Part shown: positions 9,420 to 64,000 of the stretch, one piece after another
Layout of the letters: each line of letters begins with the position of its first letter
Numbering within the stretch: position 1 is the first letter of the stretch
IMG/VR virus record: IMGVR_UViG_3300001782_000005
Span: 186,001 to 250,000 of that record
Length of the DNA: 64,000 nucleotides
Reading direction: 5' to 3' (one strand)
The notes under the pieces: generated by a model
Told to the model about the DNA's origin: nothing
Seen by the model: only the letters and a program-made list of their open reading frames with translations
The model's database searches: none
Program-made: the position numbers and the translations under genes

Positions 9420-9436
9420 TTGATTTGTAATGGAGT

Positions 9437-14647: not shown

Positions 14648-15195
14648 TGCTTAAGAAAGTAAAAGAGAAGATTAGAAAAGCAAAAGAGGCCCTTAATGGA
14701 GGACCAGTAAATTCCCAAGTGGTTTCTCATAACCATAGTATGGGTCATGGTCATTCCTATACTGGAGTTACGCAAGGTCATACTCATGCGGTACCGGGGC
14801 ATAGTCATAGCCATAGTTTTAGTACAGCATGGCCTTATGATCCTTCTACTGGACCTCTAGCAGAAACCCTTGAATGGTTTCACAAAGTTTTTTGTCCTTG
14901 TGGCAGTATTGAATGGATAGAAGTTGTGCGTAAATGGTCATGGAGTCATATAAAGGGTGATAATGTAAATAAAAAATTGGTTATTTGTAAGGAGTGTGAA
15001 AAGGTTACAATAGTTGATGATGACGAGATTGTTGAGCAAAGAGACCCAATTGATATAGATGATAAGTTTGAATTCTTTGAAAAAATACAGGAATTAAGAA
15101 TAGATTTTGAGAAAAATCAGTTTCCCAGAACAACTACCACATGGCCTGCTACTTCAACAACGAGTACAACTCCACCGCCTAGGAGCTGGCGATGA
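14647..15195 (+). CDS. Hypothetical His-rich, Cys-pair protein
   Basis: HxH repeats, CxC and CxxC, Thr/Pro tail. Confidence 0.55.
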   Translation: MLKKVKEKIRKAKEALNGGPVNSQVVSHNHSMGHGHSYTGVTQGHTHAVPGHSHSHSFSTAWPYDPSTGPLAETLEWFHKVFCPCGSIEWIEVVRKWSWSHIKGDNVNKKLVICKECEKVTIVDDDEIVEQRDPIDIDDKFEFFEKIQELRIDFEKNQFPRTTTTWPATSTTSTTPPPRSWR

Positions 15196-45123: not shown

Positions 45124-45141
45124 TATGAGGGAGTATACCAA

Positions 45142-45963
45142 ATGTCAATTGTCAAAGAAACGTCTAGTGGAGAGCACTATTTAGAGAAAATTACGACGGA
45201 AGGAGATGCACCTTATATCTCTGGTCTTCAATTGTATCAGAGAAATGTAGGTTCTGATGGAGCATCTGGTAATACTGTCTTTACTCTCACTAAACCTTAT
45301 TCTCCAGGATCAAATACTCTTTTTGTCTATTTAAATGGTCAGAAATGTACTTTGGAAGCAGCTCCAAGTCTTCCAAATGAGTATGAAGAAACTGATCCAG
45401 TTACAGTTACATTTGGTGCTTCCCTTCTTGCAAGTGACATTATTGAGTTTATTGTAGTTGGTGCTTATGTACTTGACGAAACTGAGGCAGAAAATATTCT
45501 TGGTATTGTAACAGGAACTAAAATGTATTTTTATCAGGCTGCTGCTCCAACTGGTTGGACAATTGACGCTACCCTTGGAGATGCAGTATTGGCAGTTCAT
45601 GGTTCTTCAAGTTATGCTGGTTCAGGTAGTGGTGGAGTGCAAGCAGGCACATGGACCCAACCGAATCATAACCATTCAATCACTGGTGAATCTGACCATA
45701 CTCACGATGTTACAATCTATGCAAGTGATAAAACTGGAACTATTGTCACTCATAAAGCAGAATCAGTAACAGCTATTATAACTGACGCGGTTGATGTTGC
45801 TTGGATCTCTACCTCAGGTCCAGCTAGTTATACTGGAGCAGGTAAAATTGAAACGAGTGAGGCGGAAGGTGCACATGATCATGGTGGAGTAACAGGAAAT
45901 GCAGCAACAACAAGTACCTGGCGCCCATTTGCTAATGTAGGTATTATAGCAACCAGAAATTAG
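45142..45963 (+). CDS. Tail fibre-related protein
   Basis: FYQAAAPTGWT collar-like start, HxH repeats, WRPFANVGIIA end. Confidence 0.7.
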   Translation: MSIVKETSSGEHYLEKITTEGDAPYISGLQLYQRNVGSDGASGNTVFTLTKPYSPGSNTLFVYLNGQKCTLEAAPSLPNEYEETDPVTVTFGASLLASDIIEFIVVGAYVLDETEAENILGIVTGTKMYFYQAAAPTGWTIDATLGDAVLAVHGSSSYAGSGSGGVQAGTWTQPNHNHSITGESDHTHDVTIYASDKTGTIVTHKAESVTAIITDAVDVAWISTSGPASYTGAGKIETSEAEGAHDHGGVTGNAATTSTWRPFANVGIIATRN

Positions 45964-45973
45964 GAGAATCTAG

Positions 45974-46306
45974 ATGACTGTTTATTATAAGGTTTTTGAT
46001 GAAGAAGGAAACTTTTCCCACTTCTCAAAATTTCCTACAAAAAAAGGGGATGAACCATATGCTTCTGATCACCCTGAAGTTATAACTGAGAGAAAGAGAT
46101 CTATCAAAGATACTCTAAATCCTGATGAGAATTTATTTACTCACAGGGAGAAGAGGGGACCTGAATATCCTAATCATAAAGATCAATTAGATTATATTAT
46201 GAAAGGGTTTAAATATCTGTATGACCAAGGGATTGATGTCGGGCCAGATATTAAAGAGTGGCTCAATAAGTGTTTGGCAGTAAAGGAGAAATATCCAAAG
46301 GAGTAA
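45974..46306 (+). CDS. Tail fibre assembly chaperone-like protein
   Basis: R..EYP...DQLD...K.KYPK pattern next to fibre genes. Confidence 0.55.
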   Translation: MTVYYKVFDEEGNFSHFSKFPTKKGDEPYASDHPEVITERKRSIKDTLNPDENLFTHREKRGPEYPNHKDQLDYIMKGFKYLYDQGIDVGPDIKEWLNKCLAVKEKYPKE

Positions 46307-46310
46307 AAGG

Positions 46311-46655
46311 ATGTACTGCGATGGAGTCTGTGAAAAGGATGGGAAGAAATGTGGTCATTATATAACCCTTACTATGCATGATACTCAGACCACGAAGACA
46401 AGTGTTATTGATCTATGTAGATTTCAAGCTATACTTGATTCTCTTCTTAGGATGGAAAAAAATCACTTAGGTATTCAGCAAGCGGTTGAGAGTCAAAGAA
46501 ATGAAGAAGTCAAAACCGGTGACAAACTTGCACAAGCAATGGATACTGGATTTAGACGAGTTGCAAAAGCAACAAAAGATTCTATAGTTTCGTTAAAACC
46601 AGAGAAGAAAAAAGTTAGCCAAAAATTACTAAGTTTTTTAAAGGGAGATAGTTAA
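46311..46655 (+). CDS. Hypothetical protein
   Basis: Operon ORF. Confidence 0.5.
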   Translation: MYCDGVCEKDGKKCGHYITLTMHDTQTTKTSVIDLCRFQAILDSLLRMEKNHLGIQQAVESQRNEEVKTGDKLAQAMDTGFRRVAKATKDSIVSLKPEKKKVSQKLLSFLKGDS

Positions 46656-47077
46656 TGGCTGATCTAAGTTCATCAAATTTTCCACCCGAAGTAGTTCAAT
46701 TTGCATCTGGTGTAAAGCAATACTTTTATCAGGCTGCTGCTCCAACTGGTTGGACAATTGACGCTACTCTTGGAGATGCTGTACTAGCTGTCCATGGTTC
46801 GTCAAGTTATGACGGTTCGGGTAGTGGTGGGGAACAGAGAGGAACATGGACCCAACCAAATCATACTCACCCTTTCAATGCCGGAACTCACGTTCATACA
46901 GGTGTGACCTCGTCAGAACTTGGCCTTGGTCCGAATTTAAAGAGTAGTGGTGATGATAGTCACTATCACACATTTACTACTGACCCCACGGGCGTTTCTG
47001 GTACGACTTCTGGTGGAGCAACTGCAAGTTCTTGGCGTCCATTCGCCAATGTAGGTATTATAGCAACAAAGGACTAA
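46655..47077 (+). CDS. Stand-alone tail-fibre tip module
   Basis: Shares 44-nt identity (46724-46767 vs 45529-45572) and C-terminal WRPFANVGIIAT with 45142 gene. Confidence 0.7.
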   Translation: MADLSSSNFPPEVVQFASGVKQYFYQAAAPTGWTIDATLGDAVLAVHGSSSYDGSGSGGEQRGTWTQPNHTHPFNAGTHVHTGVTSSELGLGPNLKSSGDDSHYHTFTTDPTGVSGTTSGGATASSWRPFANVGIIATKD

Positions 47078-47079
47078 TT

Positions 47080-47337
47080 ATGCCCATACCAGATATAAGG
47101 ATCGCTATTAAAATATTAAAGGATTTTCAGATTGGCGTAAGTGATCCTAAAGTTTTAGAAAATGCAGCATCAATTATTTATGCAAATGATATTAAACCTA
47201 TGTATGTAGTAAATGCAATTAGAAATCTGATTGACCCACCAGAAGAGGGTGGTTATGCTTATGCACAAGAATATATTGATCAGCAAATTGAAGATATAGT
47301 AAGAAGTTTACACAGACGAAAAACAGGAGTCTATTGA
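47080..47337 (+). CDS. Hypothetical protein, tandem paralog A
   Basis: MPIPD..AI.IL...AASII.ANDI.P...AQEYIDQ. Confidence 0.65.
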   Translation: MPIPDIRIAIKILKDFQIGVSDPKVLENAASIIYANDIKPMYVVNAIRNLIDPPEEGGYAYAQEYIDQQIEDIVRSLHRRKTGVY

Positions 47338-47591
47338 TGCCAGTTCCCAACCTTGAAGATGCTATTAATATCTTAAAAACTTTTAATGTTGAGACATCAC
47401 CAATTACTTTGCTGCAACAAGCAGCATCTATTGTCATGGCCAACGATATTAGACCTGTTGATATTATAAGGGCAATTCGGATCCTTAATGTCTCTGAAGA
47501 TGAAGATGATGAAGATGATGCACAAGAATATATTGATCAAGCAATTCAGGATTTAGAAAGAATAAGGGATGAGAGGCAAGGGTCTAGTTGA
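47334..47591 (+). CDS. Hypothetical protein, tandem paralog B
   Basis: Same pattern as paralog A. Confidence 0.65.
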   Translation: MMPVPNLEDAINILKTFNVETSPITLLQQAASIVMANDIRPVDIIRAIRILNVSEDEDDEDDAQEYIDQAIQDLERIRDERQGSS

Positions 47592-47922
47592 TATAAATAA
47601 AACTTATTTTCGGGAGAGGTTAATGGAAAAGACAGGGAAAATGGCTCACAAGTTTCTTCAACAACTAACTTCTGAAGATTCCAGGGAAATGTTTGAGGGT
47701 CTTGCGGATCTTGTGGAGGTATTAGAAAACAAAAATGACCCAGAACAAACCGAGATGTATCTAGTTCAAAATATCTATCATTTTTTCGAGAAATTGAAAG
47801 CTCTTGAAAATAACTTACATAGTTATGTAAGAGAGTCGGCAGGAGAACTCCCTGGAAATAAGTTGGATATGTTGTATGATGAGACTAAAAGTACTGGGTC
47901 TAGTATCCTCTATGAAGATTAA
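47569..47922 (+). CDS. Hypothetical protein
   Basis: Operon ORF. Confidence 0.55.
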   Translation: MRGKGLVDINKTYFRERLMEKTGKMAHKFLQQLTSEDSREMFEGLADLVEVLENKNDPEQTEMYLVQNIYHFFEKLKALENNLHSYVRESAGELPGNKLDMLYDETKSTGSSILYED

Positions 47923-47936
47923 ACAAAAGGATCGAA

Positions 47937-48389
47937 ATGTTACGAGATACATTTGTTGGACCCGGAGCCCAATTTAGGCAGGACAATGGTTTATTATTAT
48001 TCTATGACCTCTTTAGGTTGAAATGGATAAGTGCTGCCAGAGAAAATGTGGCTTTTGGAATCGACCATCGAAACATATCAAGTGATAGATGGATGTCCCT
48101 TATCTCTAGTATATATTCAAATGTTGTAGGTTATCGAATTCCTCGAAACGCAACAATCACTGCCGTGACCATCCAAACACAAAATCTAACTACCTGTACA
48201 TTTAGAATCCGAAAGAACAACTCACCGGCGAACATTATGAGTATAAATTTAGCAGCAGAATCAGGAAAATCGAATGACGATCTTGATATTGATCTATCTG
48301 AAAATGACTTCTTACAATGTTATTTAGAGAATATAACAGGAAATGTTGATTATCCTACTTTATTATTAGAATTGGCATGGAGAGAATAA
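47937..48389 (+). CDS. Virion-associated beta-domain protein (RIPRNATI...LAWRE family)
   Basis: Shares C-terminal domain with 48406 and 50374. Confidence 0.6.
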   Translation: MLRDTFVGPGAQFRQDNGLLLFYDLFRLKWISAARENVAFGIDHRNISSDRWMSLISSIYSNVVGYRIPRNATITAVTIQTQNLTTCTFRIRKNNSPANIMSINLAAESGKSNDDLDIDLSENDFLQCYLENITGNVDYPTLLLELAWRE

Positions 48390-48405
48390 ATAGGAGGTAT
48401 TAACT

Positions 48406-49680
48406 ATGGCAGAAATGTGGACATTACAAATTAGAAATGACTCCACTGCCGATGTGTTTATCGAAGACCTTGGCATAAATGTTCCTGCTGGGGACACAAT
48501 ACCTTTTGCTGATCAATTTACATATCCAGAAATTGCAGCATCTGACGATCTTCGAACAGCAGTAGGAGGGGGTGAATTAGTTCTCTATGGTTATGATGGA
48601 GACTTATCTGCTGCAGATGGACAAGAATATCTTGAGATGGTTCATATTTATTATCTCAAAGATAACTATTATTCTAAAACTGAATTGCAAACGTCTGGTC
48701 AAGCTGAAGTTCATTGGGACAATCTTACTAATGTTCCACCATTTGGTTTCTTTACATGGACGGAACCAGTTCAAGCTAGAGTTCTTGTAATTCAAGCAAC
48801 CCCTCCAGCAAATCCAGATACAGGTGATTTCTATGTAGATACTGATAATGATTACCTATATAAATGGGATGGTACTGCATGGATTGATATGAAGCACCTG
48901 ACTGAGGGTGATAGAGTAATCAACCTTGATTCAACTTCTGAGAACATCTTTGAACTCACAACTGGAACATGGACTGATCTTGGTCAACCAGCAGATAATA
49001 CTGCAGTCATTGTAAACTTTGATTACAATGATTTGCCAGCACTATGGGTTTATGATGACGAGATCTTGCTTGGTTGGATAAGAATAGCTGACTCTGAAAT
49101 GTTTACCGGCAATACACTAGACCAAGCATATGATCAAGGTGGACCTGGAGCAGGTAGAACCATCTATGTCGACTCTGGTGCAGTTCAATTAAGTGCTTCT
49201 GGTGGTTATGCTCCTCTTGAATTAACTGATCTAGCTTCTGCTCCAACTACTGGACTTGCTGATGGTCAATTGGCAGTGATTAATGGTCTGCTCTATGAGT
49301 ATGACGATGTTCGGACAAAGTGGTTGAGTGTCCAAAAAATAAGTCTTTTCTTTGGTCGAAGTGGTAATACAAAGAATCAATACCTTAGTTTCGGCGTTGG
49401 TACTCTAGCATCAAATAATTCAGGTTTCCGTATTCCACGTAACGCAACTATAGTTTCACTTTCTGGACAACTAGATGCATCTGGAACTTGTGATATGAGA
49501 ATAAGAAAGAATGGTACAGCAACGAATATAGCCACACTATCAATTGCCGCTGCTCAAGGTGCCCACGATAATACAATAAACGTTGACCTGTCTGCTGGAG
49601 ATTTTCTCCATTCTTATCTTGATGCTGTTGCTGGTGTTCCTGATCCAGTACTTATTGTTGAGATCGCTTGGAGAGAATAG
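48406..49680 (+). CDS. Modular virion-associated protein
   Basis: Shared N-domain (ND.T.D.F.EDLG) and shared C-domain (RIPRNATI...IAWRE). Confidence 0.65.
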   Translation: MAEMWTLQIRNDSTADVFIEDLGINVPAGDTIPFADQFTYPEIAASDDLRTAVGGGELVLYGYDGDLSAADGQEYLEMVHIYYLKDNYYSKTELQTSGQAEVHWDNLTNVPPFGFFTWTEPVQARVLVIQATPPANPDTGDFYVDTDNDYLYKWDGTAWIDMKHLTEGDRVINLDSTSENIFELTTGTWTDLGQPADNTAVIVNFDYNDLPALWVYDDEILLGWIRIADSEMFTGNTLDQAYDQGGPGAGRTIYVDSGAVQLSASGGYAPLELTDLASAPTTGLADGQLAVINGLLYEYDDVRTKWLSVQKISLFFGRSGNTKNQYLSFGVGTLASNNSGFRIPRNATIVSLSGQLDASGTCDMRIRKNGTATNIATLSIAAAQGAHDNTINVDLSAGDFLHSYLDAVAGVPDPVLIVEIAWRE

Positions 49681-49687
49681 GTGAATA

Positions 49688-50374
49688 ATGACAACATGGA
49701 AAGATATAATTGCGATCAACGATACAACGAGCGATATATTCCTGGAGGACCTGGGAGTAACTATCCCAGCGTCCTCCCAAGTTTCGCTACATGAGCAGTT
49801 CGAGTTTTCAGAAATAGCGAATGCTGATCCATTAAAAGTTGAAGTAGCAGCAGGAAATATAATCATAAATAATGGTACCTCAAATCTTTCAATATCAGAT
49901 GCTTTATACTATATAGACTATTGGGGTAAATATGAGTATAACTCTGAACAAGCATTTATTGAGGGTTATGTTTATGCGACTCAAACTTTAGTAGCGGATG
50001 ATACTTATAAGGATTTAGAAATATCAAGTTTATCAGTTACACCCAAGAATGCTGAATTAAATAGTAATACAGAAGTTAAGGCATTAATAGGAGGAATCTA
50101 TTCGATAAGTTATAAAGTTGCTTTCCTCTATACTGGTAATGCTGCAATTATTCAATATACTACAATCGCCTCTAAGAATGCAGTTGATATATCTAGGTCA
50201 AGAAGAAATGACTGGTCTCAATACTCTAATACTCGGGTTACTCTTGATTCAGGGAGGTTTTTGACAAGACTTAATGCAGATGATTTAGTAAAGATCAGAG
50301 CGAAGGTTAGTTGGAAATATGATAACGTAACTATTGAATATGCTAGCTTATTACTACAAAGGTTATATGAATAA
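49688..50374 (+). CDS. Modular virion-associated protein
   Basis: Shared N-domain plus C1q/TNF-like beta C-terminus. Confidence 0.55.
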   Translation: MTTWKDIIAINDTTSDIFLEDLGVTIPASSQVSLHEQFEFSEIANADPLKVEVAAGNIIINNGTSNLSISDALYYIDYWGKYEYNSEQAFIEGYVYATQTLVADDTYKDLEISSLSVTPKNAELNSNTEVKALIGGIYSISYKVAFLYTGNAAIIQYTTIASKNAVDISRSRRNDWSQYSNTRVTLDSGRFLTRLNADDLVKIRAKVSWKYDNVTIEYASLLLQRLYE

Positions 50375-51186
50375 TGGCAGTATACTACTACAATATAACG
50401 AATAATACTAGTAATCCAATTAGGTTGCCTAGTAATCAAGTAGTAGATGCCACTTCTACAGTTAGTTTAACTTTACTTGAGTTTAGAACTTATTGTGAAC
50501 AAGATGATGAATTTTTGGAGTATGTATATAATGGAGATATAAGTGTAAGTTTTGGTCCTGGATATCAATCAGTCCATATACCAATACCTTCAGATGGAAT
50601 TCATGAAGTATTGAGAAATACTGATAAGATAAAAGGAATTGAAGTTGATGATTCTGGTATAAACCCTAGTTATTTCTTAACCTATAGAAGTGGTAGTGGG
50701 AAAATAGAATATCAACCCGTTGCTCAGTCATCCCTAACAACTCCTGACACAACAGCGGTTCTTTGGATTGATACTTTAAATTCTCTCATATGCTTTTGGG
50801 ATGAGGCAAGAGGTAAATGGTTAGCAACAGTCAAGAACGTTTTTGCATTTGGTAAAGCTTCTCTATCAAGAAATACTTATTTGAATGTATCTGGTATTGC
50901 ACCCAGTTCAGCAAATGTGGGTTATTTTGTATTTAGGTACGCAACTATAACAGGAGTATGGTGCAAAGTAGCGAGTATGACTGGCGCTTCAGATCCCTAT
51001 ATGGAAATAAGGACTATATTAGATGGAACGTTGTTCACTTTTGAAATACCAGACCCAGGTCTTGTATATTATAATAATGAGTTGAATATTGATATAGATA
51101 AAGGGAGGGTTCTTCAATGTTGGGTTAGAGATAGGTTTGTAGACCCTGTTGTTCAAGTTGAAATGTCGTGGAGATGTGGAATATGA
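50374..51186 (+). CDS. Modular virion-associated protein
   Basis: C-domain ends DID.GR.LQCWV...VEMSWR. Confidence 0.55.
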   Translation: MAVYYYNITNNTSNPIRLPSNQVVDATSTVSLTLLEFRTYCEQDDEFLEYVYNGDISVSFGPGYQSVHIPIPSDGIHEVLRNTDKIKGIEVDDSGINPSYFLTYRSGSGKIEYQPVAQSSLTTPDTTAVLWIDTLNSLICFWDEARGKWLATVKNVFAFGKASLSRNTYLNVSGIAPSSANVGYFVFRYATITGVWCKVASMTGASDPYMEIRTILDGTLFTFEIPDPGLVYYNNELNIDIDKGRVLQCWVRDRFVDPVVQVEMSWRCGI

Positions 51187-52919
51187 GGAAATTCTTAAAA
51201 AATCCGGGAGCATCTGATTTCTTGATAGATGATATGGGTCAAGCGCTTCCTCCTGGAGATGAACTTGAGATTCTTCAACACCAACTTCATGCATATTTAA
51301 ATAGTGAAGATTTAATACAAGCAATTAGAAATGGAGATATATTAGCTGGAGATGGTTGGACATACTATACAAACCCAGTAGAGGGTGAGTTATATTTTAG
51401 AACTAGATTCGATGATGATACTTATATTGTAGATGGCACATCAGTTACACAAATTACTCCTGCAGTTGTTCAAGATCAAACAACTGGAAAAAAGGGTACA
51501 ACTCTTTATATGAATCTCATAGGCATTATGAGGGAATTATATAATGCCCCTGAGAATCCTATATACGATCCTGACTTTCAGAAGTTTATTGGTCCTGGTG
51601 GAAGAGAAGTTGAGCATCTAGCACGAACTCTGAACCTTGAAGAAATACATGATAAAACTGGGTTTCATTGGATAGAATTACATAAAGGTGGTTATTATAA
51701 ACCATTTGATCTATTAACGTATTATGGATGGTTGAATTCCTTTAACTATTCGGATAATAGCTGGAATAACGAAAGTGTTGCAAAAGATATGGCCAGATAT
51801 AATTTGATTATATTTGGTGACGGTATACAAGATCCTGGTCATGGAGATTATTCAAATACTGAGATTATAATACCAAGGGTAAAAGCATTAAATCCGTGCG
51901 CTCTTATCTTTGGATATGTAACTGCAAATCAATCTCAAGCAAATTTTGAAACCAAAGTTGATCAATGGAATGATCTTGAGGTACATGGGATCTTCATGGA
52001 TGAGTGTGGTTATGATTATGGAATAGATCGTTCCGAATTTAATACTTTAGTTGACTACATTCATTCACAGACTAGTGCAAATTTAGTTATGACAAATGCT
52101 TGGACCACGGATCATATTATTGGTACGGCTAATGATCCTTCATATCCAAATTCAACTTATAATCCAGGTTTGGTTGAATCTCATCTAACAGCAGATGATT
52201 GGATACACCTTGAAAGTTTTCCAATCAATACAACTGAATATTCAGGAAATAACGGTTATGAATCTAGAACTGAATGGGCGAGTAGAGGTGTAAAAGCAAT
52301 AGGACATAGAGATACATACGGTATTAATTTAGTTGCAGGTGGAATAATTAATAACGATAATTCGAATGGACAAGACTTATTTGATTTTGGTTTTATCTCT
52401 GCCTGTATGTTTGCTTTAGATGGATATGGAACTTCAGATACAGGTTATGGAGCAAGTTCAGCAACTGTTGAATTCTGGAATCGACCAGATGTCAAAGGAG
52501 CTGGAAGAGTATGGGCCCCTGCTCCATCTGTTCAGAATGATATTAGTGATAACCAGATCTACTGGAGATATACCGATTTTGCTAAATTTATGTTAGATTT
52601 CTCTAGTGGAGCAGAAGATAGTTCAATAACTATTTTTGGTCAAGTGACTGCTACAGCACCTCCTGGTAGCGGTCCAACTATGAAAACAGGAACAACTACA
52701 ACTAATAATCAAGGAGATGGATCGGTTACCTTTAATACCGCATTTCCGGATATGAATTATTCTATTGTGATGTCTGCACAATATCCAAACGATGTTGCTG
52801 TTTGTATGTGGCAAAATAAGACAGCTGGTGGTTTTGATATAAGAACTGAGAATGATCAAGGGAATAATGAACCAAATGTTACTGTCGACTGGGCTGCTAC
52901 TGCTCATTATGATCCTTAA
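51168..52919 (+). CDS. Glycoside-hydrolase-like TIM-barrel protein with shared N-domain and lectin-like C-terminus
   Basis: GIFMDECGYDY; C-terminal GSVTFNTAF...YSIV...KTAGGF...VDWAA. Confidence 0.6.
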   Translation: MEMWNMRKFLKNPGASDFLIDDMGQALPPGDELEILQHQLHAYLNSEDLIQAIRNGDILAGDGWTYYTNPVEGELYFRTRFDDDTYIVDGTSVTQITPAVVQDQTTGKKGTTLYMNLIGIMRELYNAPENPIYDPDFQKFIGPGGREVEHLARTLNLEEIHDKTGFHWIELHKGGYYKPFDLLTYYGWLNSFNYSDNSWNNESVAKDMARYNLIIFGDGIQDPGHGDYSNTEIIIPRVKALNPCALIFGYVTANQSQANFETKVDQWNDLEVHGIFMDECGYDYGIDRSEFNTLVDYIHSQTSANLVMTNAWTTDHIIGTANDPSYPNSTYNPGLVESHLTADDWIHLESFPINTTEYSGNNGYESRTEWASRGVKAIGHRDTYGINLVAGGIINNDNSNGQDLFDFGFISACMFALDGYGTSDTGYGASSATVEFWNRPDVKGAGRVWAPAPSVQNDISDNQIYWRYTDFAKFMLDFSSGAEDSSITIFGQVTATAPPGSGPTMKTGTTTTNNQGDGSVTFNTAFPDMNYSIVMSAQYPNDVAVCMWQNKTAGGFDIRTENDQGNNEPNVTVDWAATAHYDP

Positions 52920-57396: not shown

Positions 57397-57681
57397 ATGA
57401 ATCCGATAGTCGAAAGGTATTTGAAAATAATACAAAGATTGCCCTCCACATACAATCGCTTGAAGGAGATTGAGAAGGATGTAAGTGGTAGGATAGTTAG
57501 AAGTTTGACTAATCCTCAATTAATTGAGTTACATAGAAAATGTCATATGCTTTATGGAGCATGGACAAAGAAGGGAAATGTGAAGAGAGAAGCATTTGAA
57601 TTTCTTTTCAATGTACATGAAAAAATAGTAGAAGAAATGCTTCGTCGAAAAATAAATCACAATACTCCGCTGGAGATTTAA
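57397..57681 (+). CDS. Hypothetical protein
   Basis: Operon ORF. Confidence 0.55.
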   Translation: MNPIVERYLKIIQRLPSTYNRLKEIEKDVSGRIVRSLTNPQLIELHRKCHMLYGAWTKKGNVKREAFEFLFNVHEKIVEEMLRRKINHNTPLEI

Positions 57682-59254: not shown

Positions 59255-60229
59255 ATGGCGAAAAGTGGAGAACTCACAAACAAGTCTTTGGCAAAAAGAA
59301 TTGATAAATTTATAGATAACCGAATTTTAGTTGTTGGTGATATAATAGTAGATGAATTTATATGGGGTCATGTCAAAAGAGTTTCCCCCGAAGCTCCAGT
59401 CCCAATAGTTAATGTTGAAAGGCGATCCATGATGCTCGGAGGCGCCGGAAACGTAGTACATAACATTATTTCTTTGGGGGGAAATGCTACAATCTGTGGA
59501 GTAATCGGGAGTGATTCTACAGGATGGAAGTTACGAGAAATGCTTATAAGCATAAGCAGCCCTACCGACTATATTATAATAGATGAAGGAAGACCAACTA
59601 CTGTAAAAACTAGAGTAGTAGCTCACTCTCAGCAAGTTGTTCGAGTCGACCTGGAAGATACAAAACCTATTAGCTCAGAATATACCAAGAAAATTCTAGA
59701 TGCAATTACTGACCAATTACCAATACTACACGCTATTATAATTGCTGATTATGGAAAGGGTGTTGTTACTCAAGAGCTTATGGACGGAATTCGCTCAATT
59801 ATACCTAATGATCTTATTTTAGCAGTAGATCCTAAGGTACAGAATATAGAATTATATAAAGGGGCCACACTAATTACTCCTAATTCTTATGAAGCTAAAC
59901 TTATGGCAAATACAGATACTATAGATGAAGCTGGTCGATTACTACTCGATAAACTTAATTGTAAGACAGTATTAATAACACGTGGGGAAAAGGGAATGAC
60001 CCTTTTTGAAGATAATCAAATTATCCAAATACCTACAATAGCAAGAAAGGTTTTTGATGTATCTGGAGCGGGTGATACTGTAATTAGTACCTTTACTCTA
60101 TCGTTAGTCTCTGGACTAAACTCAAAGCAGGCAGCAATACTTGCAAATGCTGCAGCCGGTTTGGTGGTTGCAGAGGTTGGTACTGCTGCTATATCAGCAA
60201 CTAGATTAAAACAATTTTTATTGGAGTAA
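59255..60229 (+). CDS. rfaE1: D-glycero-beta-D-manno-heptose-7-phosphate kinase (RfaE/HldE domain I)
   Basis: VVGDIIVD, RVSPEAPVP, GGAGNV, TTVKTRV, DVSGAGDTV. Confidence 0.9.
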   Translation: MAKSGELTNKSLAKRIDKFIDNRILVVGDIIVDEFIWGHVKRVSPEAPVPIVNVERRSMMLGGAGNVVHNIISLGGNATICGVIGSDSTGWKLREMLISISSPTDYIIIDEGRPTTVKTRVVAHSQQVVRVDLEDTKPISSEYTKKILDAITDQLPILHAIIIADYGKGVVTQELMDGIRSIIPNDLILAVDPKVQNIELYKGATLITPNSYEAKLMANTDTIDEAGRLLLDKLNCKTVLITRGEKGMTLFEDNQIIQIPTIARKVFDVSGAGDTVISTFTLSLVSGLNSKQAAILANAAAGLVVAEVGTAAISATRLKQFLLE

Positions 60230-60272
60230 GAGATGGATTATTATGAGACAATAATTGAAAAAGGATTAGAGA

Positions 60273-60773
60273 ATGCTGAACGATCAAGAAAAGAGAAGTC
60301 CGAAGATGGTGATAATGTGCGGACTACCGAAGAGCGGGAAATCGACAATAGTGGACCGAGAATTGCGGGAGTACCAAGTCATTTGTGGTGATGATATTAG
60401 ACTTGCACTTGGAGTTGAATTTGATCCAAGACTAGAAGAATTTGTGTGGGGTACATTTAATACAATGGTAAGAGCTAGTCTAATTAGAGGATTAGATGTA
60501 GTTCTTGATGGAACACATACAACAAGATTTAGAAGAGAAAGAGTTATTAATTTAGGGAAAGAATATGGAGCAGATATAACAATCATCCATGTAAAAACTC
60601 CATATGAAACTTGTATCAAAAGAGCAATCGAATCAGACTTTCCACTAGCTGTCATGGAAAGGATGCGAGCTAATCTAGAGCTTGAACCTCCATCGGAAGA
60701 AGAAGGTGTAGAAGTAGTTGAGAAGAGTGTTGAAATTATTCACGGAGCTGTTGTAATAACTGGATACAATTAA
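60273..60773 (+). CDS. P-loop kinase (AAA_33/PNK-like)
   Basis: CGLPKSGKST, ICGDDIR, VVLDGT. Confidence 0.8.
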   Translation: MLNDQEKRSPKMVIMCGLPKSGKSTIVDRELREYQVICGDDIRLALGVEFDPRLEEFVWGTFNTMVRASLIRGLDVVLDGTHTTRFRRERVINLGKEYGADITIIHVKTPYETCIKRAIESDFPLAVMERMRANLELEPPSEEEGVEVVEKSVEIIHGAVVITGYN

Positions 60774-60790
60774 TTAATTAGAGGATTATA

Positions 60791-61126
60791 ATGGTATATT
60801 GGATTACAGGTAGATCTGGGGCTGGTAAAACAACTTTAGCAAAGCGTATTGCAAAACAAACAAATGGAATTATTTTAGATGGAGATAAAATAAGGGAATA
60901 TTTTCCCTCTGATTTTACAGACGAGGGAAGAGAAAACAATATAATGCTTATAGCAAAATTTGCTACGTTATTAGAGGAACAGGGGTTTACAGTTGTAGTC
61001 GCTTGTGTTAGCCCAAAAAGAGAATGGAGGAGGAAGGCACAATCATTACTTAACGAATGTCTTGAAATTTGCCTTCCCTTTGGAGAATTATGGGAAGGAA
61101 CTGACTATGAAGAACCAGAATATTAA
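60791..61126 (+). CDS. cysC: Adenylyl-sulfate (APS) kinase-like, lid-less short form
   Basis: WITGRSGAGKTT, LDGD.IR, F..E.R..N, YEEP. Confidence 0.75.
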   Translation: MVYWITGRSGAGKTTLAKRIAKQTNGIILDGDKIREYFPSDFTDEGRENNIMLIAKFATLLEEQGFTVVVACVSPKREWRRKAQSLLNECLEICLPFGELWEGTDYEEPEY

Positions 61127-61778
61127 AGTAGTAATTGCACCGTGGGGTGGTCATGCGACATCCCATATCCGTAGATTCATGGATGCGTATATGCGACCTG
61201 ATGTGGTTCTTGGTGCTAATGGTGACATATGTCATATGCCAAAACCGACCATGCAAAAAGCATGGAAACATCGTACAGGAACCGATCTTGATATGAGTAT
61301 CACTCTTAATGACAATTTAGTAAGATTTATTCATAACTCAAAAAAGCCAATTTTATTGAGTGGCGGAGTTTCCAAATTTAGTCCGTTTCTAACAATAAAC
61401 TCAGTTAAAGCAATGTGTATTGTACGCAACCCTGTATATGCTTATTGTTCAATGTATAGTCGAAGGCATCCAGAAAAAGCTGAACCTTTTGGGGGAATAG
61501 ATACAAAAGAATTAGCTATTTGGTATACAACTAGATGGAATAATATCGTGTATGACTTTCTTGAATCAGGAAATCCTATTATCAGGTTTGAGCATTGGAC
61601 TGATGATATGAAGCGCCAAGACGTTGGCCAATTTAGAAAACTAATAAATTCTATAGATCATAGGAGAGCATCTACTAAAAAACCAATAAGTAAAGAAATA
61701 GAAGATTTAGTTATTAAAAGAACCAGAGAATTATATGGAGAAATTAATAAATTTCATAAGCGCCTAAGAGGGAGATAA
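61107..61778 (+). CDS. Sulfotransferase-like protein (divergent)
   Basis: IVRNP..AYCS and IRFE motifs; degenerate 5'-PSB loop. Confidence 0.55.
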   Translation: MKNQNIKVVIAPWGGHATSHIRRFMDAYMRPDVVLGANGDICHMPKPTMQKAWKHRTGTDLDMSITLNDNLVRFIHNSKKPILLSGGVSKFSPFLTINSVKAMCIVRNPVYAYCSMYSRRHPEKAEPFGGIDTKELAIWYTTRWNNIVYDFLESGNPIIRFEHWTDDMKRQDVGQFRKLINSIDHRRASTKKPISKEIEDLVIKRTRELYGEINKFHKRLRGR

Positions 61779-61780
61779 TA

Positions 61781-62476
61781 TTGGGAGTAAAGATATTAGT
61801 AGTTGGTTTTCCAAGGAGTGGAACTACCCTTACATACAGAGTTTGTAAGAAACATCCCCAAGTGGCGGGCATGTTTAATGAAGAACATATTCTAAGAAGT
61901 AGATCTTTACCGGGATTTCGATTTGTGAATAAGCAGTATTTATATAATAGGTACCCGAAATTCAAACTTAATTATGGAGAAAAACTAATTTATGAGAAAG
62001 GAGTTTTGGGTAAAAGGCATATATCAAATGTTACTGTAGTTGACTATTGTAAACAGTGGAATAAAACATTTGGAAAAGATTCAAGAATAATTCAAATAGT
62101 GAGACACCCCTTTGATTCTTGGAATTCAATTATAAGGTTTAAATATAGGAGTCGAAGAATAGAGAAAGAAATACCAAGAATGTTTGATCAGTATCTTAAA
62201 TGTATACCTAATTATACACAAGAAATTTCAGAATTGAAGACATGCTTAACTATCAAGTACGAGAATTTAGTTTTAAATTTTAAAGAGATCACTGCAAATA
62301 TATATAAGCACTGTAATCTAGATCCCTTTAATTATAGCGAAGTTGTAAGGACAGGAAGAGCCTTTAACTACAAGAGAAATGGTTTTGGACTAAAGGTTGA
62401 TTCAAGACTTAATAAAGTTATTGATGTATTCAATAGATTCGATGGACCAAAATATGAGTTAGGAGATTCATCTTGA
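61781..62476 (+). CDS. Sulfotransferase
   Basis: GFPRSGTT, IVRHPFDSWNS, IKYENL. Confidence 0.85.
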   Translation: MGVKILVVGFPRSGTTLTYRVCKKHPQVAGMFNEEHILRSRSLPGFRFVNKQYLYNRYPKFKLNYGEKLIYEKGVLGKRHISNVTVVDYCKQWNKTFGKDSRIIQIVRHPFDSWNSIIRFKYRSRRIEKEIPRMFDQYLKCIPNYTQEISELKTCLTIKYENLVLNFKEITANIYKHCNLDPFNYSEVVRTGRAFNYKRNGFGLKVDSRLNKVIDVFNRFDGPKYELGDSS

Positions 62477-63261
62477 AATTTCCAGACTTTATAATAGCAG
62501 GTTTTATGAAATGTGGAACAACACAACTATTTCTAAATTTAAATAAACACCCTGACGTAACAATGTGCAAACCAGCAGGGCCAATAAGACCAGGAGTCAG
62601 TGGTGGTACAGAAATGAGATTCTGGGGTTTAAATAATTGGAAGAGAGGAGTCGACTGGTATAAAAGTAGATTTCAGGGTGATATTTGTGGTGAGAAAAGT
62701 CCAGATTATGCAGGTTATAAAAAGTGTATGAGACTTATGTCTCAACATTCTCCAGACACTAAGCTATTAATAGGTATTAGAAACCCAATTGATCGAGCAT
62801 ATTCACATTATCAGATGAATCTCCAGCAGAGAAAATTAAGTTGGCCATTTAGTCTTGATAATTGTAAAAGTCAACCTAGGGGAAAACTCTATTTACAGTT
62901 GGGTATGTATCATAAGCTACTTACAAATAATGTTCTATTATTTTTCCCAAGAGAACAGATTTATATATACATTTGTGAGAGGATGAAAGTTAATTTAACT
63001 GAGGAGATGAAAAAGATATATAATTTTATTGGAGCTAAACTAATTGAATTGCCAACTGAGAGAATACCTACGTCTAAGAGGTATAATAAAAAGACAGATG
63101 ATATGTACGAGGATAGTCAGGAAAAAGTATATAAAGTTTGGTCAAGAAAATATGAACCTATAAAGAAAAAGGATAAAAGAGAGTTTAATGATTTTTATAA
63201 AGAACATAATGAAAAGTTATTTGACCTTCTAGGATACAGAATAGAGGAATGGGAGAATTAA
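62473..63261 (+). CDS. Sulfotransferase (heparan-sulfate ST-like)
   Basis: PDFIIAGFMKCGTT, GEKSPDY, RNPIDRAYSHY. Confidence 0.88.
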   Translation: MKFPDFIIAGFMKCGTTQLFLNLNKHPDVTMCKPAGPIRPGVSGGTEMRFWGLNNWKRGVDWYKSRFQGDICGEKSPDYAGYKKCMRLMSQHSPDTKLLIGIRNPIDRAYSHYQMNLQQRKLSWPFSLDNCKSQPRGKLYLQLGMYHKLLTNNVLLFFPREQIYIYICERMKVNLTEEMKKIYNFIGAKLIELPTERIPTSKRYNKKTDDMYEDSQEKVYKVWSRKYEPIKKKDKREFNDFYKEHNEKLFDLLGYRIEEWEN

Positions 63262-63262: not shown

Positions 63263-63634
63263 ATGGAAACAATGGCTAAAATTATGACCTTTATAAAAGA
63301 TTTTGGGATTGTCATACTAGCAGTCATCATAGGTATTATATTCTTCAGCATGAGAACTGAAACGTCAGAAATGTTAAGAAATCAATTCGAATATAATATG
63401 AGGCAACAGGAGAATATATATAAGCTAGTTGACAGTCTACAAAATTTGGCTAAAGCACAGCAAGATTTTGTGACCAAATTCGAACAAAGAAAAGAAGTGG
63501 TACAAGAAATAAAAGTTGACTTAGGTAGATCAATACGAACGCTTAACAGAAGTGTTAAGGAGCTAAAAAATGTTCAAGATCCTAAAGAATCCTATACTCT
63601 TCTTGCTAATTCTTGGAGTTGGAGTCCTAACTAG
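63263..63634 (+). CDS. Inner-membrane spanin-like (Rz-type) protein
   Basis: N-terminal TM plus coiled coil; overlapped by downstream lipoprotein. Confidence 0.55.
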   Translation: METMAKIMTFIKDFGIVILAVIIGIIFFSMRTETSEMLRNQFEYNMRQQENIYKLVDSLQNLAKAQQDFVTKFEQRKEVVQEIKVDLGRSIRTLNRSVKELKNVQDPKESYTLLANSWSWSPN

Positions 63635-64000
63635 TTGTGCAGGAGCACAAAAATTCGAACCTCCTGATGAATTTAAACCAATTGAAGTAGAGGAAAGATT
63701 TACTAAACCATTTAAACTTAGAATAGACAAATTAGCTGAAATTTTGGAGAAGGTTCACAAGATGGATAAACCTGTTCCAATCTATCTTGTGAGAAAGGGG
63801 AATACTAGTGACTTTGATTGGGAAGGGGAAATTCCCGATGATGCTCAGATAATCGGTTACCTTGTGAAAGAGCATAATAAGATAGTTGCTAAAATAGAGC
63901 AAGGTAAGATGATGACTGAGATTGCTGACCTTCTTGTACAAAGAGTTCAAGTTGAAGTAGAACTTTATAACTCAATGCTAGAACTAGTCAAACTCCAAGA
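63570..64000 (+). CDS. Lipoprotein, outer-membrane spanin-like; runs off window end, absent from ORF track
   Basis: Manual translation MFKILKNPILFLLILGVGVLTSC-AGAQ; lipobox LTSC; AAGGAG RBS. Confidence 0.65.
   Translation, partial: MFKILKNPILFLLILGVGVLTSCAGAQKFEPPDEFKPIEVEERFTKPFKLRIDKLAEILEKVHKMDKPVPIYLVRKGNTSDFDWEGEIPDDAQIIGYLVKEHNKIVAKIEQGKMMTEIADLLVQRVQVEVELYNSMLELVKLQ

What the first reader, a model, noticed from the sequence alone, without database searches (positions are those of the whole stretch)
59255..63261. Heptose kinase, APS kinase and three sulfotransferases: phage-encoded glycan sulfation cassette
Seen: contiguous RfaE domain I, P-loop kinase, lid-less CysC-like kinase and three sulfotransferase-fold genes. 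Known: APS kinase makes PAPS, the sulfotransferase donor; RfaE acts in ADP-heptose synthesis for LPS or protein heptosylation. Inference: sulfated heptose or other glycans added to host LPS (superinfection exclusion), virion proteins or modified DNA.
Basis: partly seen in the sequence, partly recalled or inferred. Interest (0 to 1): 0.62.

Follow-up and report, generated by a model that had tools for sequence, protein, structure and literature searches.

The report
Phage sulfation operon with mini APS kinase
A 277-kb marine-sediment phage carries a tight operon with a heptose kinase, a stripped-down kinase that probably makes the sulfate donor PAPS, and several sugar-type sulfotransferases, and the same kinase-plus-sulfotransferase pairing recurs in many unrelated phages, which points to an unstudied ability of phages to make sulfated glycans.

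Summary
Window 59255-63261 (+) holds six co-oriented, translationally coupled genes:
- HldA/RfaE domain I. It passes NCBI's equivalog cut-off.
- An AAA_33 P-loop kinase.
- A 111-aa APS-kinase core. It lacks the lid helix and the C-terminal third.
- Three sulfotransferase-fold genes. Two are Pfam-significant. The third is shown by profile-profile comparison and a pLDDT 96 model.

A fourth sulfotransferase lies just past the window end, after a spanin-like gene pair.

The genome is a complete 277-kb distant T4-like phage from marine sediment. Elsewhere it encodes an HldC-like adenylyltransferase, a GT9 heptosyltransferase-like enzyme, two GT1 and one GT2. It has no GmhA, GmhB, HldD, ATP sulfurylase or CysQ.

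The mini APS kinase is a populous, length-conserved family found almost only on phage and metagenome contigs. It keeps every core APS- and ATP-binding residue. Sulfotransferases are its commonest neighbours, often inside glycan clusters.

Best reading: the host supplies APS, the phage converts it to PAPS, and cytoplasmic sulfotransferases sulfate a glycan. Heptose is an optional input, because a close relative keeps the sulfation genes without HldA. The acceptor (virion, host envelope or DNA) is unresolved.

The work is comparative and structural only. No biochemistry exists.

The parts
59255..60229 (+). HldA / RfaE domain I: D-glycero-beta-D-manno-heptose-7-phosphate kinase (PfkB family), 324 aa
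   Evidence: TIGR02198 scores 355.3 bits against a cut-off of 345, and PfkB 8e-38. It is 45% identical to the HldA next to a mini APS kinase in phage contig L024. It is absent from the syntenic relative L014.
60273..60773 (+). Small P-loop kinase (AAA_33; PSTK/polynucleotide-kinase-like), 166 aa; substrate unknown
   Evidence: AAA_33 7.6e-18. PSTK TIGR03574 4.6e-11, far below its cut-off. PDB PSTK 4e-6. The Atlas neighbours are all generic AAA_33. An 86% identical copy sits in the same position in L014. It is not found beside mini-APSK in other lineages, apart from one weak hit in L046.
60791..61126 (+). Mini APS kinase (CysC core without lid helix and C-terminal third), 111 aa; proposed APS to PAPS kinase
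   Evidence: Pfam APS_kinase scores 65.8 bits (GA 21.1) over profile positions 4-101 of 152. TIGR00455 scores 65.3 bits, below its cut-off of 138.7. The AF2 model has pLDDT 90.5, and the first 40 Foldseek PDB ranks are APS kinases, with gluconate kinase first at rank 41 (for example 5cb8, rmsd 1.3 A over 102 columns). The word search finds 97 clusters, nearly all 105-125 aa. Invariant residues are the P-loop G12-K13-T14, D30, D32, R35, P75 and R80, with G31, R47 and S74 in at least 90%.
61107..61778 (+). ST_A: divergent sulfotransferase-fold protein, 223 aa (start overlaps the kinase stop by 20 nt)
   Evidence: No Pfam or NCBIfam hit. The exhaustive search finds 95 representatives. hhalign against a sulfotransferase profile gives 84.7%, E 6.6e-6. 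A PDB profile search gives weak hits to SULT4A1 and StaL at the 3'-phosphate motif. The AF2 model has pLDDT 96.3. The VIA-align top 13 are all sulfotransferases, led by heparan sulfate 2-OST at Z 9.8. The 3'-PB motif R107-x-P109...S115 is conserved, but the 5'-PSB loop has no Lys/Arg.
61781..62476 (+). ST_B: sulfotransferase, 231 aa (TTG start)
   Evidence: Sulfotransfer_3 1e-15 and Sulfotransfer_1 3e-6. It has an intact 5'-PSB loop (P-R-S-G-T-T), a 3'-PB motif (R-H-P...S) and a G-E-K motif. It is 28% identical to a sulfotransferase adjacent to mini-APSK in L024.
62473..63261 (+). ST_C: heparan-sulfate-sulfotransferase-like carbohydrate sulfotransferase, 262 aa (TTG start, 4-nt overlap)
   Evidence: Sulfotransfer_1 4.5e-13. 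Its PDB sequence matches at E below 0.01 are heparan sulfate 3-OSTs and NDST, plus one bacterial sulfotransferase, 3rnl (5.7e-14 for 3-OST-3). The aligned K-x-G-T loop, E-K-x-P-x-Y catalytic Glu motif and R-N-P...S motif are all kept. It is 43% identical to L024_256. Its orthologues sit in GT, methyltransferase and dehydratase clusters.
63263..63634 (+). N-terminal TM + coiled-coil protein, 123 aa (i-spanin-like); interleaved in the operon
   Evidence: The sequence shows a TM segment and coiled-coil-type weak hits. phrog_739 Rz-like spanin scores only E 0.008. It is conserved in L014 at 50% identity.
63570..64000 (+). Lipoprotein-signal protein (o-spanin-like), 195 aa; runs off the window to 64157. 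It is followed at 64167-64895 (outside the window) by the fourth sulfotransferase, ST_D
   Evidence: The lipobox-like L-T-S-C at residues 20-23 is read from the sequence. Full length comes from the genome. The L014 copy is 72% identical. ST_D: Sulfotransfer_3 5.6e-12. The genome's only four sulfotransferase hits all lie at 247-251 kb.

Best explanation
This is a late-region operon of a marine jumbo phage. It gives the infected cell a private PAPS-dependent sulfation capacity directed at a glycan.

Proposed steps:
1. The host's ATP sulfurylase makes APS. The phage has no such enzyme (inferred).
2. The 111-aa mini APS kinase phosphorylates the 3'-OH of APS to give PAPS. This is inferred from the conserved catalytic core and from gene neighbourhoods.
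3. Four cytoplasmic sulfotransferase-fold enzymes (ST_A to ST_D) have no signal peptides and are of carbohydrate-sulfotransferase type. They transfer sulfate to different positions of a sugar chain (inferred).
4. That chain is built with phage glycosyltransferases: a GT9-like enzyme, two GT1 and one GT2. In this phage it probably contains heptose, supplied as ADP-heptose by phage HldA (in the operon) and an HldC-like enzyme 10 kb downstream. Host GmhA and GmhB fill the missing steps (inferred).

Heptose is an accessory input, not the core of the system. The core is the mini kinase plus the sulfotransferases.

The final carrier of the sulfated glycan is undecided. My split is roughly 40% virion proteins, 40% host envelope polysaccharide or LPS, and 20% something else.

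The AAA_33 kinase is part of the operon in this lineage only, and its substrate is unknown.
For: Gene identities:
- HldA is above the equivalog cut-off.
- ST_B, ST_C and ST_D are above the Pfam cut-offs.
- ST_C retains the PAPS loop, the 3'-phosphate motif and the catalytic Glu motif of heparan sulfate sulfotransferases.
- ST_A has a sulfotransferase fold.
- The mini kinase keeps the P-loop, D-G-D, both phosphosulfate-binding Arg equivalents, the stacking aromatic and S-P across 31 diverse members. Its model superposes on APS kinases at 1.3-2.2 A.

Operon structure: the genes are coupled or overlapping, each with an SD-like site.

Recurrence of the kinase-sulfotransferase pairing:
- L014 keeps the whole set in synteny.
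- Independent phage contigs L017, L020, L023, L024 and L028 pair the mini kinase with sulfotransferases of three Pfam families.
- 16 of 49 non-redundant IMG/VR loci have a sulfotransferase within 4 kb, using low-sensitivity home-made HMMs.
- Among 125 neighbour ORFs of 24 further loci, Sulfotransfer_3 (8) and Sulfotransfer_1 (6) are the top Pfam families.
- Background is low. ST_C finds one weak match in 50,697 phage records. The rest of this 277-kb genome has no other sulfotransferase.

Glycan context:
- The clusters around the kinase and ST_C orthologues hold GT1, GT2, GT9, NeuB, CMP-sugar synthetase, NDP-sugar dehydrogenase, 4,6-dehydratase/epimerase pairs and methyltransferases.
- The own genome has an HldC-like gene (TIGR02199, 158.6 bits), a GT9-like gene, two GT1 and one GT2.
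- HldA is adjacent to the mini kinase in L018/L019 and L024 as well.

Dependence on host APS: no ATP sulfurylase and no CysD-type protein were found in the phage.
Against: - No enzyme here has been assayed.
- The mini kinase lacks the lid helix and the C-terminal strand and helix that close over both nucleotides in solved APS kinases. It scores far below the NCBIfam equivalog cut-off, so it may be slow, need a partner or use another substrate.
- ST_A and ST_D lack the Lys/Arg of the 5'-PSB loop.
- ST_A's structural matches are only moderate (Z under 10, Foldseek E about 0.01).
- L018/L019, L022 and L016 show the mini kinase with no recognisable sulfotransferase in the flank.
- The HldC-like and GT9-like proteins are below their NCBIfam cut-offs.
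- No GmhA, GmhB or HldD was found.
- Nothing in the sequence identifies the acceptor.
Confidence: 0.6

Rival explanations
1. Two unrelated neighbours. The heptose kinase (with HldC and GT9) forms an ADP-heptose/LPS-type module. The kinase-sulfotransferase genes form a separate module acting on a non-heptose acceptor. Their adjacency here reflects gene packing in a mosaic region.
For: L014 keeps AAA33, mini-APSK, four sulfotransferases and the spanin-like pair but has no HldA. Only about 340 bp sits at the corresponding spot. HldA is absent from all 49 non-redundant IMG/VR APS-kinase-like loci. HldC and GT9 lie 10 and 27 kb away. Cyanophages carry split HldE pairs without sulfotransferases.
Against: HldA lies within one or two genes of the mini kinase in three separate lineages: the window, L018/L019 and L024. 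Between the window and L024, ST_B and ST_C orthologues are also shared despite different replication modules. The L014 contig is only 36% of a genome.
Confidence: 0.3
2. Sulfur-assimilation auxiliary gene. The viral 'cysC' boosts host assimilatory sulfate reduction (APS to PAPS to sulfite) to supply cysteine and methionine during infection, as viromics papers assume. On this view the sulfotransferases are incidental.
For: This is the published reading of 109-135-aa viral CysC proteins (PMC9529941; PMC13172472). The core catalytic residues are conserved.
Against: This phage has no CysH-type PAPS reductase above cut-off and no ATP sulfurylase. The gene is translationally coupled to a sulfotransferase. 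Sulfotransferases are the commonest neighbours of the family. PAPS drained by four sulfotransferases would work against assimilation.
Confidence: 0.06
3. Non-glycan acceptor. The sulfotransferases act on DNA, on virion protein tyrosines or on a small molecule. For DNA, O-sulfation of a hydroxymethyl-pyrimidine could create a leaving group or a charged adduct. The AAA_33 kinase would be the DNA or RNA-end kinase of such a pathway.
For: The genome has a very divergent thymidylate-synthase-family gene as its only TS/ThyX homologue, and a PolB fused to a UDG-superfamily domain. AAA_33 resembles polynucleotide kinases and PSTK. TPSTs and natural-product sulfotransferases are among ST_A's structural neighbours. 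Some mini-kinase loci sit in nucleotide-metabolism regions.
Against: ST_C's closest solved relatives are almost all polysaccharide sulfotransferases, and the sugar-directed catalytic Glu motif is kept. The recurring partners are glycosyltransferases and sugar-nucleotide enzymes. The TS-like gene is 43 kb away and keeps the uracil-type Asn, so it may be an ordinary divergent TS.
Confidence: 0.1
4. The mini kinase is not an APS kinase. Loss of the lid opens the pocket, so it phosphorylates the 3'-OH of another adenosine 5'-diphospho compound (ADP-heptose, ADP-ribose-type signals, dephospho-CoA-like molecules). Alternatively it is a non-catalytic nucleotide-binding subunit.
For: The lid and C-terminal elements are deleted in the whole family. 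It scores below the equivalog cut-off. It is adjacent to HldA without any sulfotransferase in L018/L019. A 211-aa form with an unrelated C-terminal extension occurs in L015/L016.
Against: Both arginines that bind the phosphosulfate, the stacking aromatic and the D-G-D motif are invariant or nearly so. This would be unexpected if the sulfate end of the substrate had changed. There is strong linkage with PAPS-using enzymes.
Confidence: 0.1

Closest known systems
Bacterial PAPS-dependent glycan sulfation (Sinorhizobium NodPQ + NodH / LpsS; mycobacterial CysNC + Stf sulfotransferases), from established knowledge
   Same: An APS-kinase activity is genetically coupled to cytoplasmic carbohydrate sulfotransferases that decorate a surface glycoconjugate. 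The sulfotransferases carry the 5'-PSB and 3'-PB motifs.
   Different: No ATP sulfurylase is encoded here. The kinase is a 111-aa lid-less core rather than a 170-200-aa CysC or a CysN-CysC fusion. There are four sulfotransferases in a row. The system is carried by a lytic-type jumbo phage.
Canonical APS kinase CysC (PF01583 / TIGR00455; e.g. PDB 7yq0, 5cb8, 1m7g)
   Same: The fold and core residues match. The first 40 Foldseek ranks are APS kinases at 26-36% identity. The P-loop, D-G-D, two Arg and S-P are conserved.
   Different: It is missing the 19-aa lid helix (the RD.KGLY.KA region), 4 further residues and about 35 C-terminal residues. TIGR00455 scores 65 bits against a cut-off of 138.7.
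Viral 'cysC' auxiliary metabolic genes reported in viromes (PMC9529941; PMC13172472)
   Same: Probably the same protein family. Viral CysC of 109-135 residues cluster apart from cellular CysC.
   Different: Those papers read the genes as sulfate-assimilation genes and do not mention sulfotransferases (0 occurrences). Here the family is tied to sulfotransferase and glycan clusters.
Heparan sulfate 3-O-sulfotransferase / NDST sulfotransferase domain / 2-O-sulfotransferase (animal Golgi enzymes)
   Same: ST_C aligns end to end with 3-OST-3 (5.7e-14) and keeps its catalytic and PAPS-binding motifs. ST_A's best structural match is HS 2-OST at Z 9.8.
   Different: Identity is about 25% or lower. The proteins are cytoplasmic and soluble, with no TM stem. 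The acceptor is unknown. ST_A lacks the loop Lys.
Split HldE (HldA + HldC) pairs in T4-like cyanophages and ADP-heptose synthesis in Gram-negative bacteria
   Same: HldA is above the equivalog cut-off. The HldC-like protein's best family is rfaE_dom_II. Cyanophages carry a homologous kinase plus nucleotidyltransferase.
   Different: Here the two genes are 10 kb apart. HldA is embedded in a sulfation operon. GmhA, GmhB and HldD are not encoded.

Membership tests
APS kinase (CysC, EC 2.7.1.25; PF01583/TIGR00455) | Walker A P-loop G-x-x-G-x-G-K-S/T | tested here: met
   G7...G12-K13-T14 are invariant in 31 family members.
APS kinase (CysC, EC 2.7.1.25; PF01583/TIGR00455) | D-G-D motif plus the two Arg and the aromatic residue that hold APS; S-P motif | tested here: met
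   D30, D32, R35, P75 and R80 are invariant. G31, R47 and S74 are in at least 90% of members. An F/Y aligns with the APS-stacking Phe of solved kinases.
APS kinase (CysC, EC 2.7.1.25; PF01583/TIGR00455) | Mobile lid helix and C-terminal strand/helix closing the active site | tested here: not met
   There is a 19-aa plus 4-aa deletion, and the protein ends right after Y-E-E-P. The same holds in all mini members. The model has a 4-stranded sheet.
APS kinase (CysC, EC 2.7.1.25; PF01583/TIGR00455) | Curated family score | tested here: inconclusive
   The Pfam GA is passed (65.8 against 21.1). The NCBIfam equivalog cut-off is failed (65.3 against 138.7) because a third of the model is unmatched.
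APS kinase (CysC, EC 2.7.1.25; PF01583/TIGR00455) | Converts APS + ATP to PAPS + ADP | not testable with these tools
   This needs an enzyme assay or cysC complementation.
PAPS-dependent sulfotransferases (PF00685/PF13469) | 5'-phosphosulfate-binding loop with Lys/Arg (K/R-x-G-T/S-T/S) | tested here: inconclusive
   It is met in ST_B (R-S-G-T-T) and ST_C (K-C-G-T-T). It is not met in ST_A (G-H-A-T-S) or ST_D (G-S-G-T-T), which have no basic residue there.
PAPS-dependent sulfotransferases (PF00685/PF13469) | 3'-phosphate-binding motif R-x-P...S | tested here: met
   It is present in all four proteins. R107 and P109 are invariant and S115 is in at least 90% across 58 ST_A-family sequences.
PAPS-dependent sulfotransferases (PF00685/PF13469) | Family score / fold | tested here: met
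   ST_B, ST_C and ST_D are above the Pfam GA. For ST_A the evidence is indirect only: hhalign 84.7% and a structure search whose top 13 hits are sulfotransferases, Z 9.8-7.4.
PAPS-dependent sulfotransferases (PF00685/PF13469) | Catalytic base (Glu of the E-K-x-P-x-Y motif in heparan-sulfate-type enzymes) | tested here: met
   ST_C G-E-K-S-P-D-Y aligns to the 3-OST-3 motif. ST_B has G-E-K. It was not assessed for ST_A or ST_D.
HldA / RfaE domain I (TIGR02198) | Equivalog score and PfkB ATP-binding signature | tested here: met
   355.3 bits against a cut-off of 345, aligned over positions 3-313 of 315. The G-A-G-D motif is present near the C-terminus.
ADP-L-glycero-beta-D-manno-heptose pathway (GmhA, HldA, GmhB, HldC, HldD + GT9) | Complete enzyme set in the same genome | tested here: not met
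   Present: HldA, an HldC-like protein (158.6 bits, cut-off 181.5) and a GT9-like protein (Pfam 25.7 against 22; TIGR02193 31 against 185). Absent: SIS_2/GmhA, GmhB and an Epimerase-family HldD. The host would have to supply these.

The most novel reading that the evidence does not exclude
The short viral 'cysC' genes catalogued in marine viromes as sulfur-assimilation genes may instead be the PAPS generators of a widespread, uncharacterised phage pathway. That pathway would build sulfated and often methylated glycans, in some lineages also containing heptose or nonulosonic acid. These glycans would most interestingly be displayed on the virion itself as a glycosaminoglycan-like polyanionic coat. 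The lid-less 110-aa kinase would then be the smallest functional APS kinase known.
Probability: 0.3. Interest if true: 0.8.

Novelty: new variant of a known kind. Interest (0 to 1): 0.62.

Why it matters
Sulfated glycans are central to marine carbon cycling, biofilms and host-microbe recognition. Their synthesis has not been attributed to phages, and the held literature contains almost nothing on phage sulfotransferases.

If the reading is right, three things follow:
1. A commonly reported viral 'sulfur-cycle' gene would need to be reinterpreted.
2. Phages would have a way to change the charge and antigenicity of either their own particles or the infected cell surface. This bears on adsorption, superinfection exclusion and depolymerase resistance.
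3. The 111-aa kinase would define the minimal catalytic core of APS kinase. With its compact soluble sulfotransferases, it could be a handy toolkit for enzymatic sulfation.

Tried and rejected
- Near-identity DNA search of the cassette against 50,697 phage records found no match.
- ST_C tblastn against phages gave one weak hit in a Vibrio podophage, so cultured relatives are lacking.
- PHROGs gave no annotation for any sulfotransferase.
- ST_A had no Pfam or NCBIfam hit, and only 5 close clusters came from the word search. Foldseek alone was inconclusive at E about 0.01. It was resolved only with the exhaustive search, hhalign and VIA-align.
- ST_B and ST_D have no PDB sequence match.
- The idea that AAA_33 complements the lid-less kinase as a conserved partner was rejected. 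It is next to the mini kinase only in the close relative L014, with one weak hit 600 nt away in L046. No complex prediction was run, because no binding claim is made.
- The unknown 165-180-aa genes downstream of the mini kinase in L020 and L022 are unrelated to AAA_33 or to each other by BLAST, and NCBIfam is blank for them.
- The first attempt to scan IMG/VR with the mixed alignment A1 failed because it had no conserved stretch. It was redone with A5.
- Own-genome searches were negative for GmhA (SIS_2), GmhB, Epimerase, ATP-sulfurylase, CysQ/Inositol_P and ThyX. PAPS_reduct gave only a 13.8-bit sub-threshold match at window 713-880.
- No RNA-seq run holds the region, so expression could not be checked.
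- The GT2 gene is split across the contig ends. Its joined sequence has no reference and was not analysed as a whole.

Full report
**What is there**

The window is bases 186001-250000 of a 277,131-bp IMG/VR virus record. Its ends overlap by 94 bp, so the assembly is complete and circular. It is a phage:
- Tail-collar and gp53-like fibre genes lie at 43921-52919.
- A family-B polymerase lies at 9437-12700. It is 26-28% identical to T4-group polymerases.
- A spanin-like gene pair is present.

Public runs that hold the cassette are marine sediment and seawater metagenomes from at least five studies. None is RNA.

**Checking the observation**

From 59255 to 63261 there are six + strand genes. Each is preceded by a Shine-Dalgarno-like site, and the gaps run from -20 to +43 nt, so this is one operon.

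1. 59255-60229 is HldA/RfaE domain I. TIGR02198 scores 355.3 bits against a cut-off of 345, and PfkB scores 8e-38.
2. 60273-60773 is an AAA_33 P-loop kinase. Its weak best relatives are PSTK and polynucleotide kinases.
3. 60791-61126 encodes 111 aa that match APS kinase only over the first two thirds of the model.
4. 61107-61778 (ST_A) has no family hit. An exhaustive search found 95 representatives.
   - Their profile matches a sulfotransferase profile (hhalign 84.7%, E 6.6e-6).
   - The family's invariant R-x-P...S aligns with the 3'-phosphate motif of SULT4A1 and StaL.
   - Its pLDDT 96.3 model has sulfotransferases as its 13 best matches among 48,161 chains, Z 9.8-7.4. These Z values are moderate, so I call it sulfotransferase-fold, not a proven sulfotransferase.
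5. 61781-62476 (ST_B) passes the Pfam cut-off.
6. 62473-63261 (ST_C) passes the Pfam cut-off. ST_C aligns end to end with heparan sulfate 3-O-sulfotransferases. It keeps the K-x-G-T loop, the E-K-x-P-x-Y catalytic Glu motif and the R-N-P...S motif.

Two additions:
- The operon continues with a TM/coiled-coil gene and an overlapping lipoprotein gene, which look like spanins. A fourth sulfotransferase, ST_D, follows at genome 250167-250895, just outside the window.
- These four are the only sulfotransferase-like genes in the genome.

**The mini APS kinase**

The word search returned 97 clusters. Almost all are 105-125 aa, and full-length APS kinases appear only at the weak end of the list.

In an alignment of 31 sequences, the mini forms differ from the full-length ones in three places:
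- They lack a 19-aa segment, the conserved lid helix.
- They lack 4 further residues.
- They lack about 35 C-terminal residues.

They retain as invariant the P-loop residues G12, K13 and T14, D30 and D32, R35, P75 and R80. G31, R47 and S74 are in at least 90%. By alignment to solved kinases, R35 and R47 are the two arginines that hold the phosphosulfate.

The AlphaFold model has pLDDT 90.5. The first 40 ranks of the Foldseek PDB search are APS kinases, and 5cb8 superposes at 1.3 A over 102 columns. This is a conserved, minimised APS-kinase core and not a gene fragment.

Viral CysC proteins of 109-135 residues have been noticed before. They were read as sulfate-assimilation genes, with no mention of sulfotransferases (PMC9529941; PMC13172472).

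**Comparative context**

- A relative, L014, has a kinase 90% identical. It keeps AAA33, the mini kinase, ST_A to ST_C, the spanin-like pair and ST_D in the same order at 50-90% identity (TM/coiled-coil gene lowest). It has no HldA. Only about 340 bp lies at that spot, and there is none elsewhere on its 113-kb contig, which is 36% of a genome.
- Unrelated phage contigs pair the mini kinase with sulfotransferases:
  - L017 has Sulfotransfer_2 and Sulfotransfer_3.
  - L020 is in this group.
  - L023 is in this group.
  - L024 has three sulfotransferases, a methyltransferase, two dehydratase/epimerases, an NDP-sugar dehydrogenase and HldA.
  - L028 has GT9, GT1, GT-D, an ST_C orthologue, a methyltransferase and two dehydratase/epimerases.
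- ST_C and ST_B have orthologues next to the kinase in L024 at 43% and 28% identity. The L024 HldA is 45% identical to the window's HldA.
- L018/L019 place the kinase between a nonulosonic-acid-type sugar cluster and HldA, with no sulfotransferase in the 8-kb flanks.
- An IMG/VR scan gave 70 APS-kinase-like loci. Home-made HMMs found a sulfotransferase within 4 kb in 16 of 49 non-redundant loci, and HldA in none.
- A Pfam tally over 125 neighbour ORFs from 24 further loci put Sulfotransfer_3 (8) and Sulfotransfer_1 (6) at the top. They came ahead of radical SAM, 2OG oxygenases, GT2 and GT1.
- Phage sulfotransferases are otherwise rare, so this linkage is not chance.

**Rest of the genome**

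- An HldC-like adenylyltransferase lies at 256104-256532. TIGR02199 is its best family by a wide margin at 158.6 bits, but that is below the cut-off of 181.5.
- At 267.8-277.1 kb there is a cluster of:
  - a pectate-lyase-fold protein with weak similarity to hyaluronate endo-lyases;
  - a radical SAM/SPASM enzyme;
  - a GT1;
  - a GT9 heptosyltransferase-like protein;
  - a methyltransferase-like ORF;
  - a GT2 split across the contig ends.
- Another GT1 lies at 178 kb.
- Not found: GmhA, GmhB, an Epimerase-family HldD, ATP sulfurylase, CysD/CysH above cut-off, and CysQ.

**Mechanism proposed**

*Shown:* the gene identities, the operon structure, the conserved catalytic cores and the recurrent kinase-sulfotransferase-glycan linkage.

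*Inferred:*
1. Host ATP sulfurylase provides APS.
2. The mini kinase makes PAPS. This would be essential in hosts that reduce APS directly and keep little PAPS.
3. The four cytoplasmic sulfotransferase-fold enzymes sulfate distinct positions of a glycan assembled by the phage glycosyltransferases.
4. In this phage, HldA and the HldC-like enzyme add an ADP-heptose supply, with host GmhA and GmhB completing the pathway.

PAPS is cytoplasmic and the enzymes have no signal peptides. Sulfation must therefore occur on a cytoplasmic intermediate: a lipid-linked or nucleotide-linked sugar, a nascent polysaccharide, or virion proteins before assembly.

Whether the product ends on the virion or on the host envelope cannot be decided from sequence. 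Position after the fibre genes and among lysis genes suggests late expression. That favours neither target clearly.

**Caveats**

- There is no biochemistry for any of these proteins.
- The kinase lacks elements considered important for closing the active site.
- ST_A and ST_D lack the basic residue of the 5'-PSB loop.
- HldC and GT9 are sub-threshold.
- Some mini-kinase loci show no sulfotransferase nearby.

**Rivals**

Four rival readings are set out with their evidence in the rival explanations:
- two independent modules;
- a sulfur-assimilation auxiliary gene;
- a DNA, protein or small-molecule acceptor;
- another substrate for the kinase.

**Novelty**

The chemistry (APS kinase plus sulfotransferases) is classical, and viral cysC genes are already catalogued. 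Three things are new:
- the recognition that the viral form is a distinct lid-less mini family;
- its tie to multi-sulfotransferase glycan clusters across phage lineages;
- a jumbo phage that combines it with an ADP-heptose branch.

I rate it a new variant of a known kind, of fairly high interest.

The split GT2 gene was not analysed as a joined sequence, because no reference exists for it.

Noticed in passing
window 9437-12700 (+): The 1087-aa family-B DNA polymerase carries an N-terminal UDG-superfamily domain (PF03167, 2e-14, residues 36-173) fused to the exonuclease and polymerase domains. Its best cultured relatives are T4-group polymerases at only 26-28% identity.
   Followed up: partly
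window 15192-16055 (+): A very divergent thymidylate-synthase-family protein: PF00303 42 bits over part of the model, and PDB TS hits at about 35 bits. It has the P-P-C nucleophile motif and an R-S-W-D...G-F-P-A-N motif, which is the uracil-type Asn. It is the genome's only TS homologue, and there is no ThyX. It could be a divergent TS or a dUMP hydroxymethylase, which would imply modified DNA.
   Followed up: partly
window 63263-63634 and 63570-64157 (second gene runs off the window): An overlapping pair of a TM + coiled-coil protein and a lipoprotein-signal protein (L-T-S-C lipobox). It looks like an i-spanin/o-spanin pair wedged between ST_C and ST_D, and it is conserved in L014. This implies a Gram-negative host. 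The PHROG support is weak (E 0.008).
   Followed up: partly
genome 250167-250895 (L002:668-1396), about 170 nt beyond the window end: A fourth sulfotransferase, ST_D (Sulfotransfer_3 5.6e-12). It belongs to the same cassette, and its PAPS loop lacks the usual Lys/Arg.
   Followed up: yes
genome 267806-277131 and 1-714 (L002:18307-19719, L003, L004): A second glycan-related cluster. It holds a pectate-lyase-fold protein weakly like BT3328-family hyaluronate endo-lyases (a possible depolymerase), radical SAM/SPASM, GT1, a GT9-like protein, a methyltransferase-like ORF and a GT2 split by the contig ends. The 94-bp terminal repeat is an assembly overlap.
   Followed up: partly
L015:7040-7675 and L016:8001-8636: A 211-aa variant of the mini APS kinase. 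Its N-terminal 108 aa are 61% identical to the window protein. Its C-terminal 100 aa have no family match and are not the missing CysC C-terminus. It sits next to a sigma-factor-like gene and a P22-type portal gene, with no sulfotransferase seen.
   Followed up: no
L018/L019 8317-10132 and L024 7340-9146: A conserved triplet of mini APS kinase, a truncated NDP-sugar dehydrogenase (286-288 aa) and HldA in PolA-type phage contigs. In L018 it lies beside NeuB and a CMP-sugar synthetase (nonulosonic-acid-type genes).
   Followed up: partly
window 57397-57681 (+): A 94-aa ORF matching only part of the pyrimidine-dimer DNA glycosylase family (Pyr_excise, 6.9e-6). It may be a short or truncated denV-like gene.
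   Followed up: no
window 671-1270 (+): A sub-threshold PAPS_reduct-like match (13.8 bits) in a 199-aa ORF. It is probably another PP-loop ATPase and not CysH or CysD.
   Followed up: no
genome 259754-260731 and 258014-259024 (L002:10255-11232, 8515-9525): A second radical SAM protein and an HD-domain protein lie a few kb downstream of the HldC-like gene. Their function is unknown.
   Followed up: no
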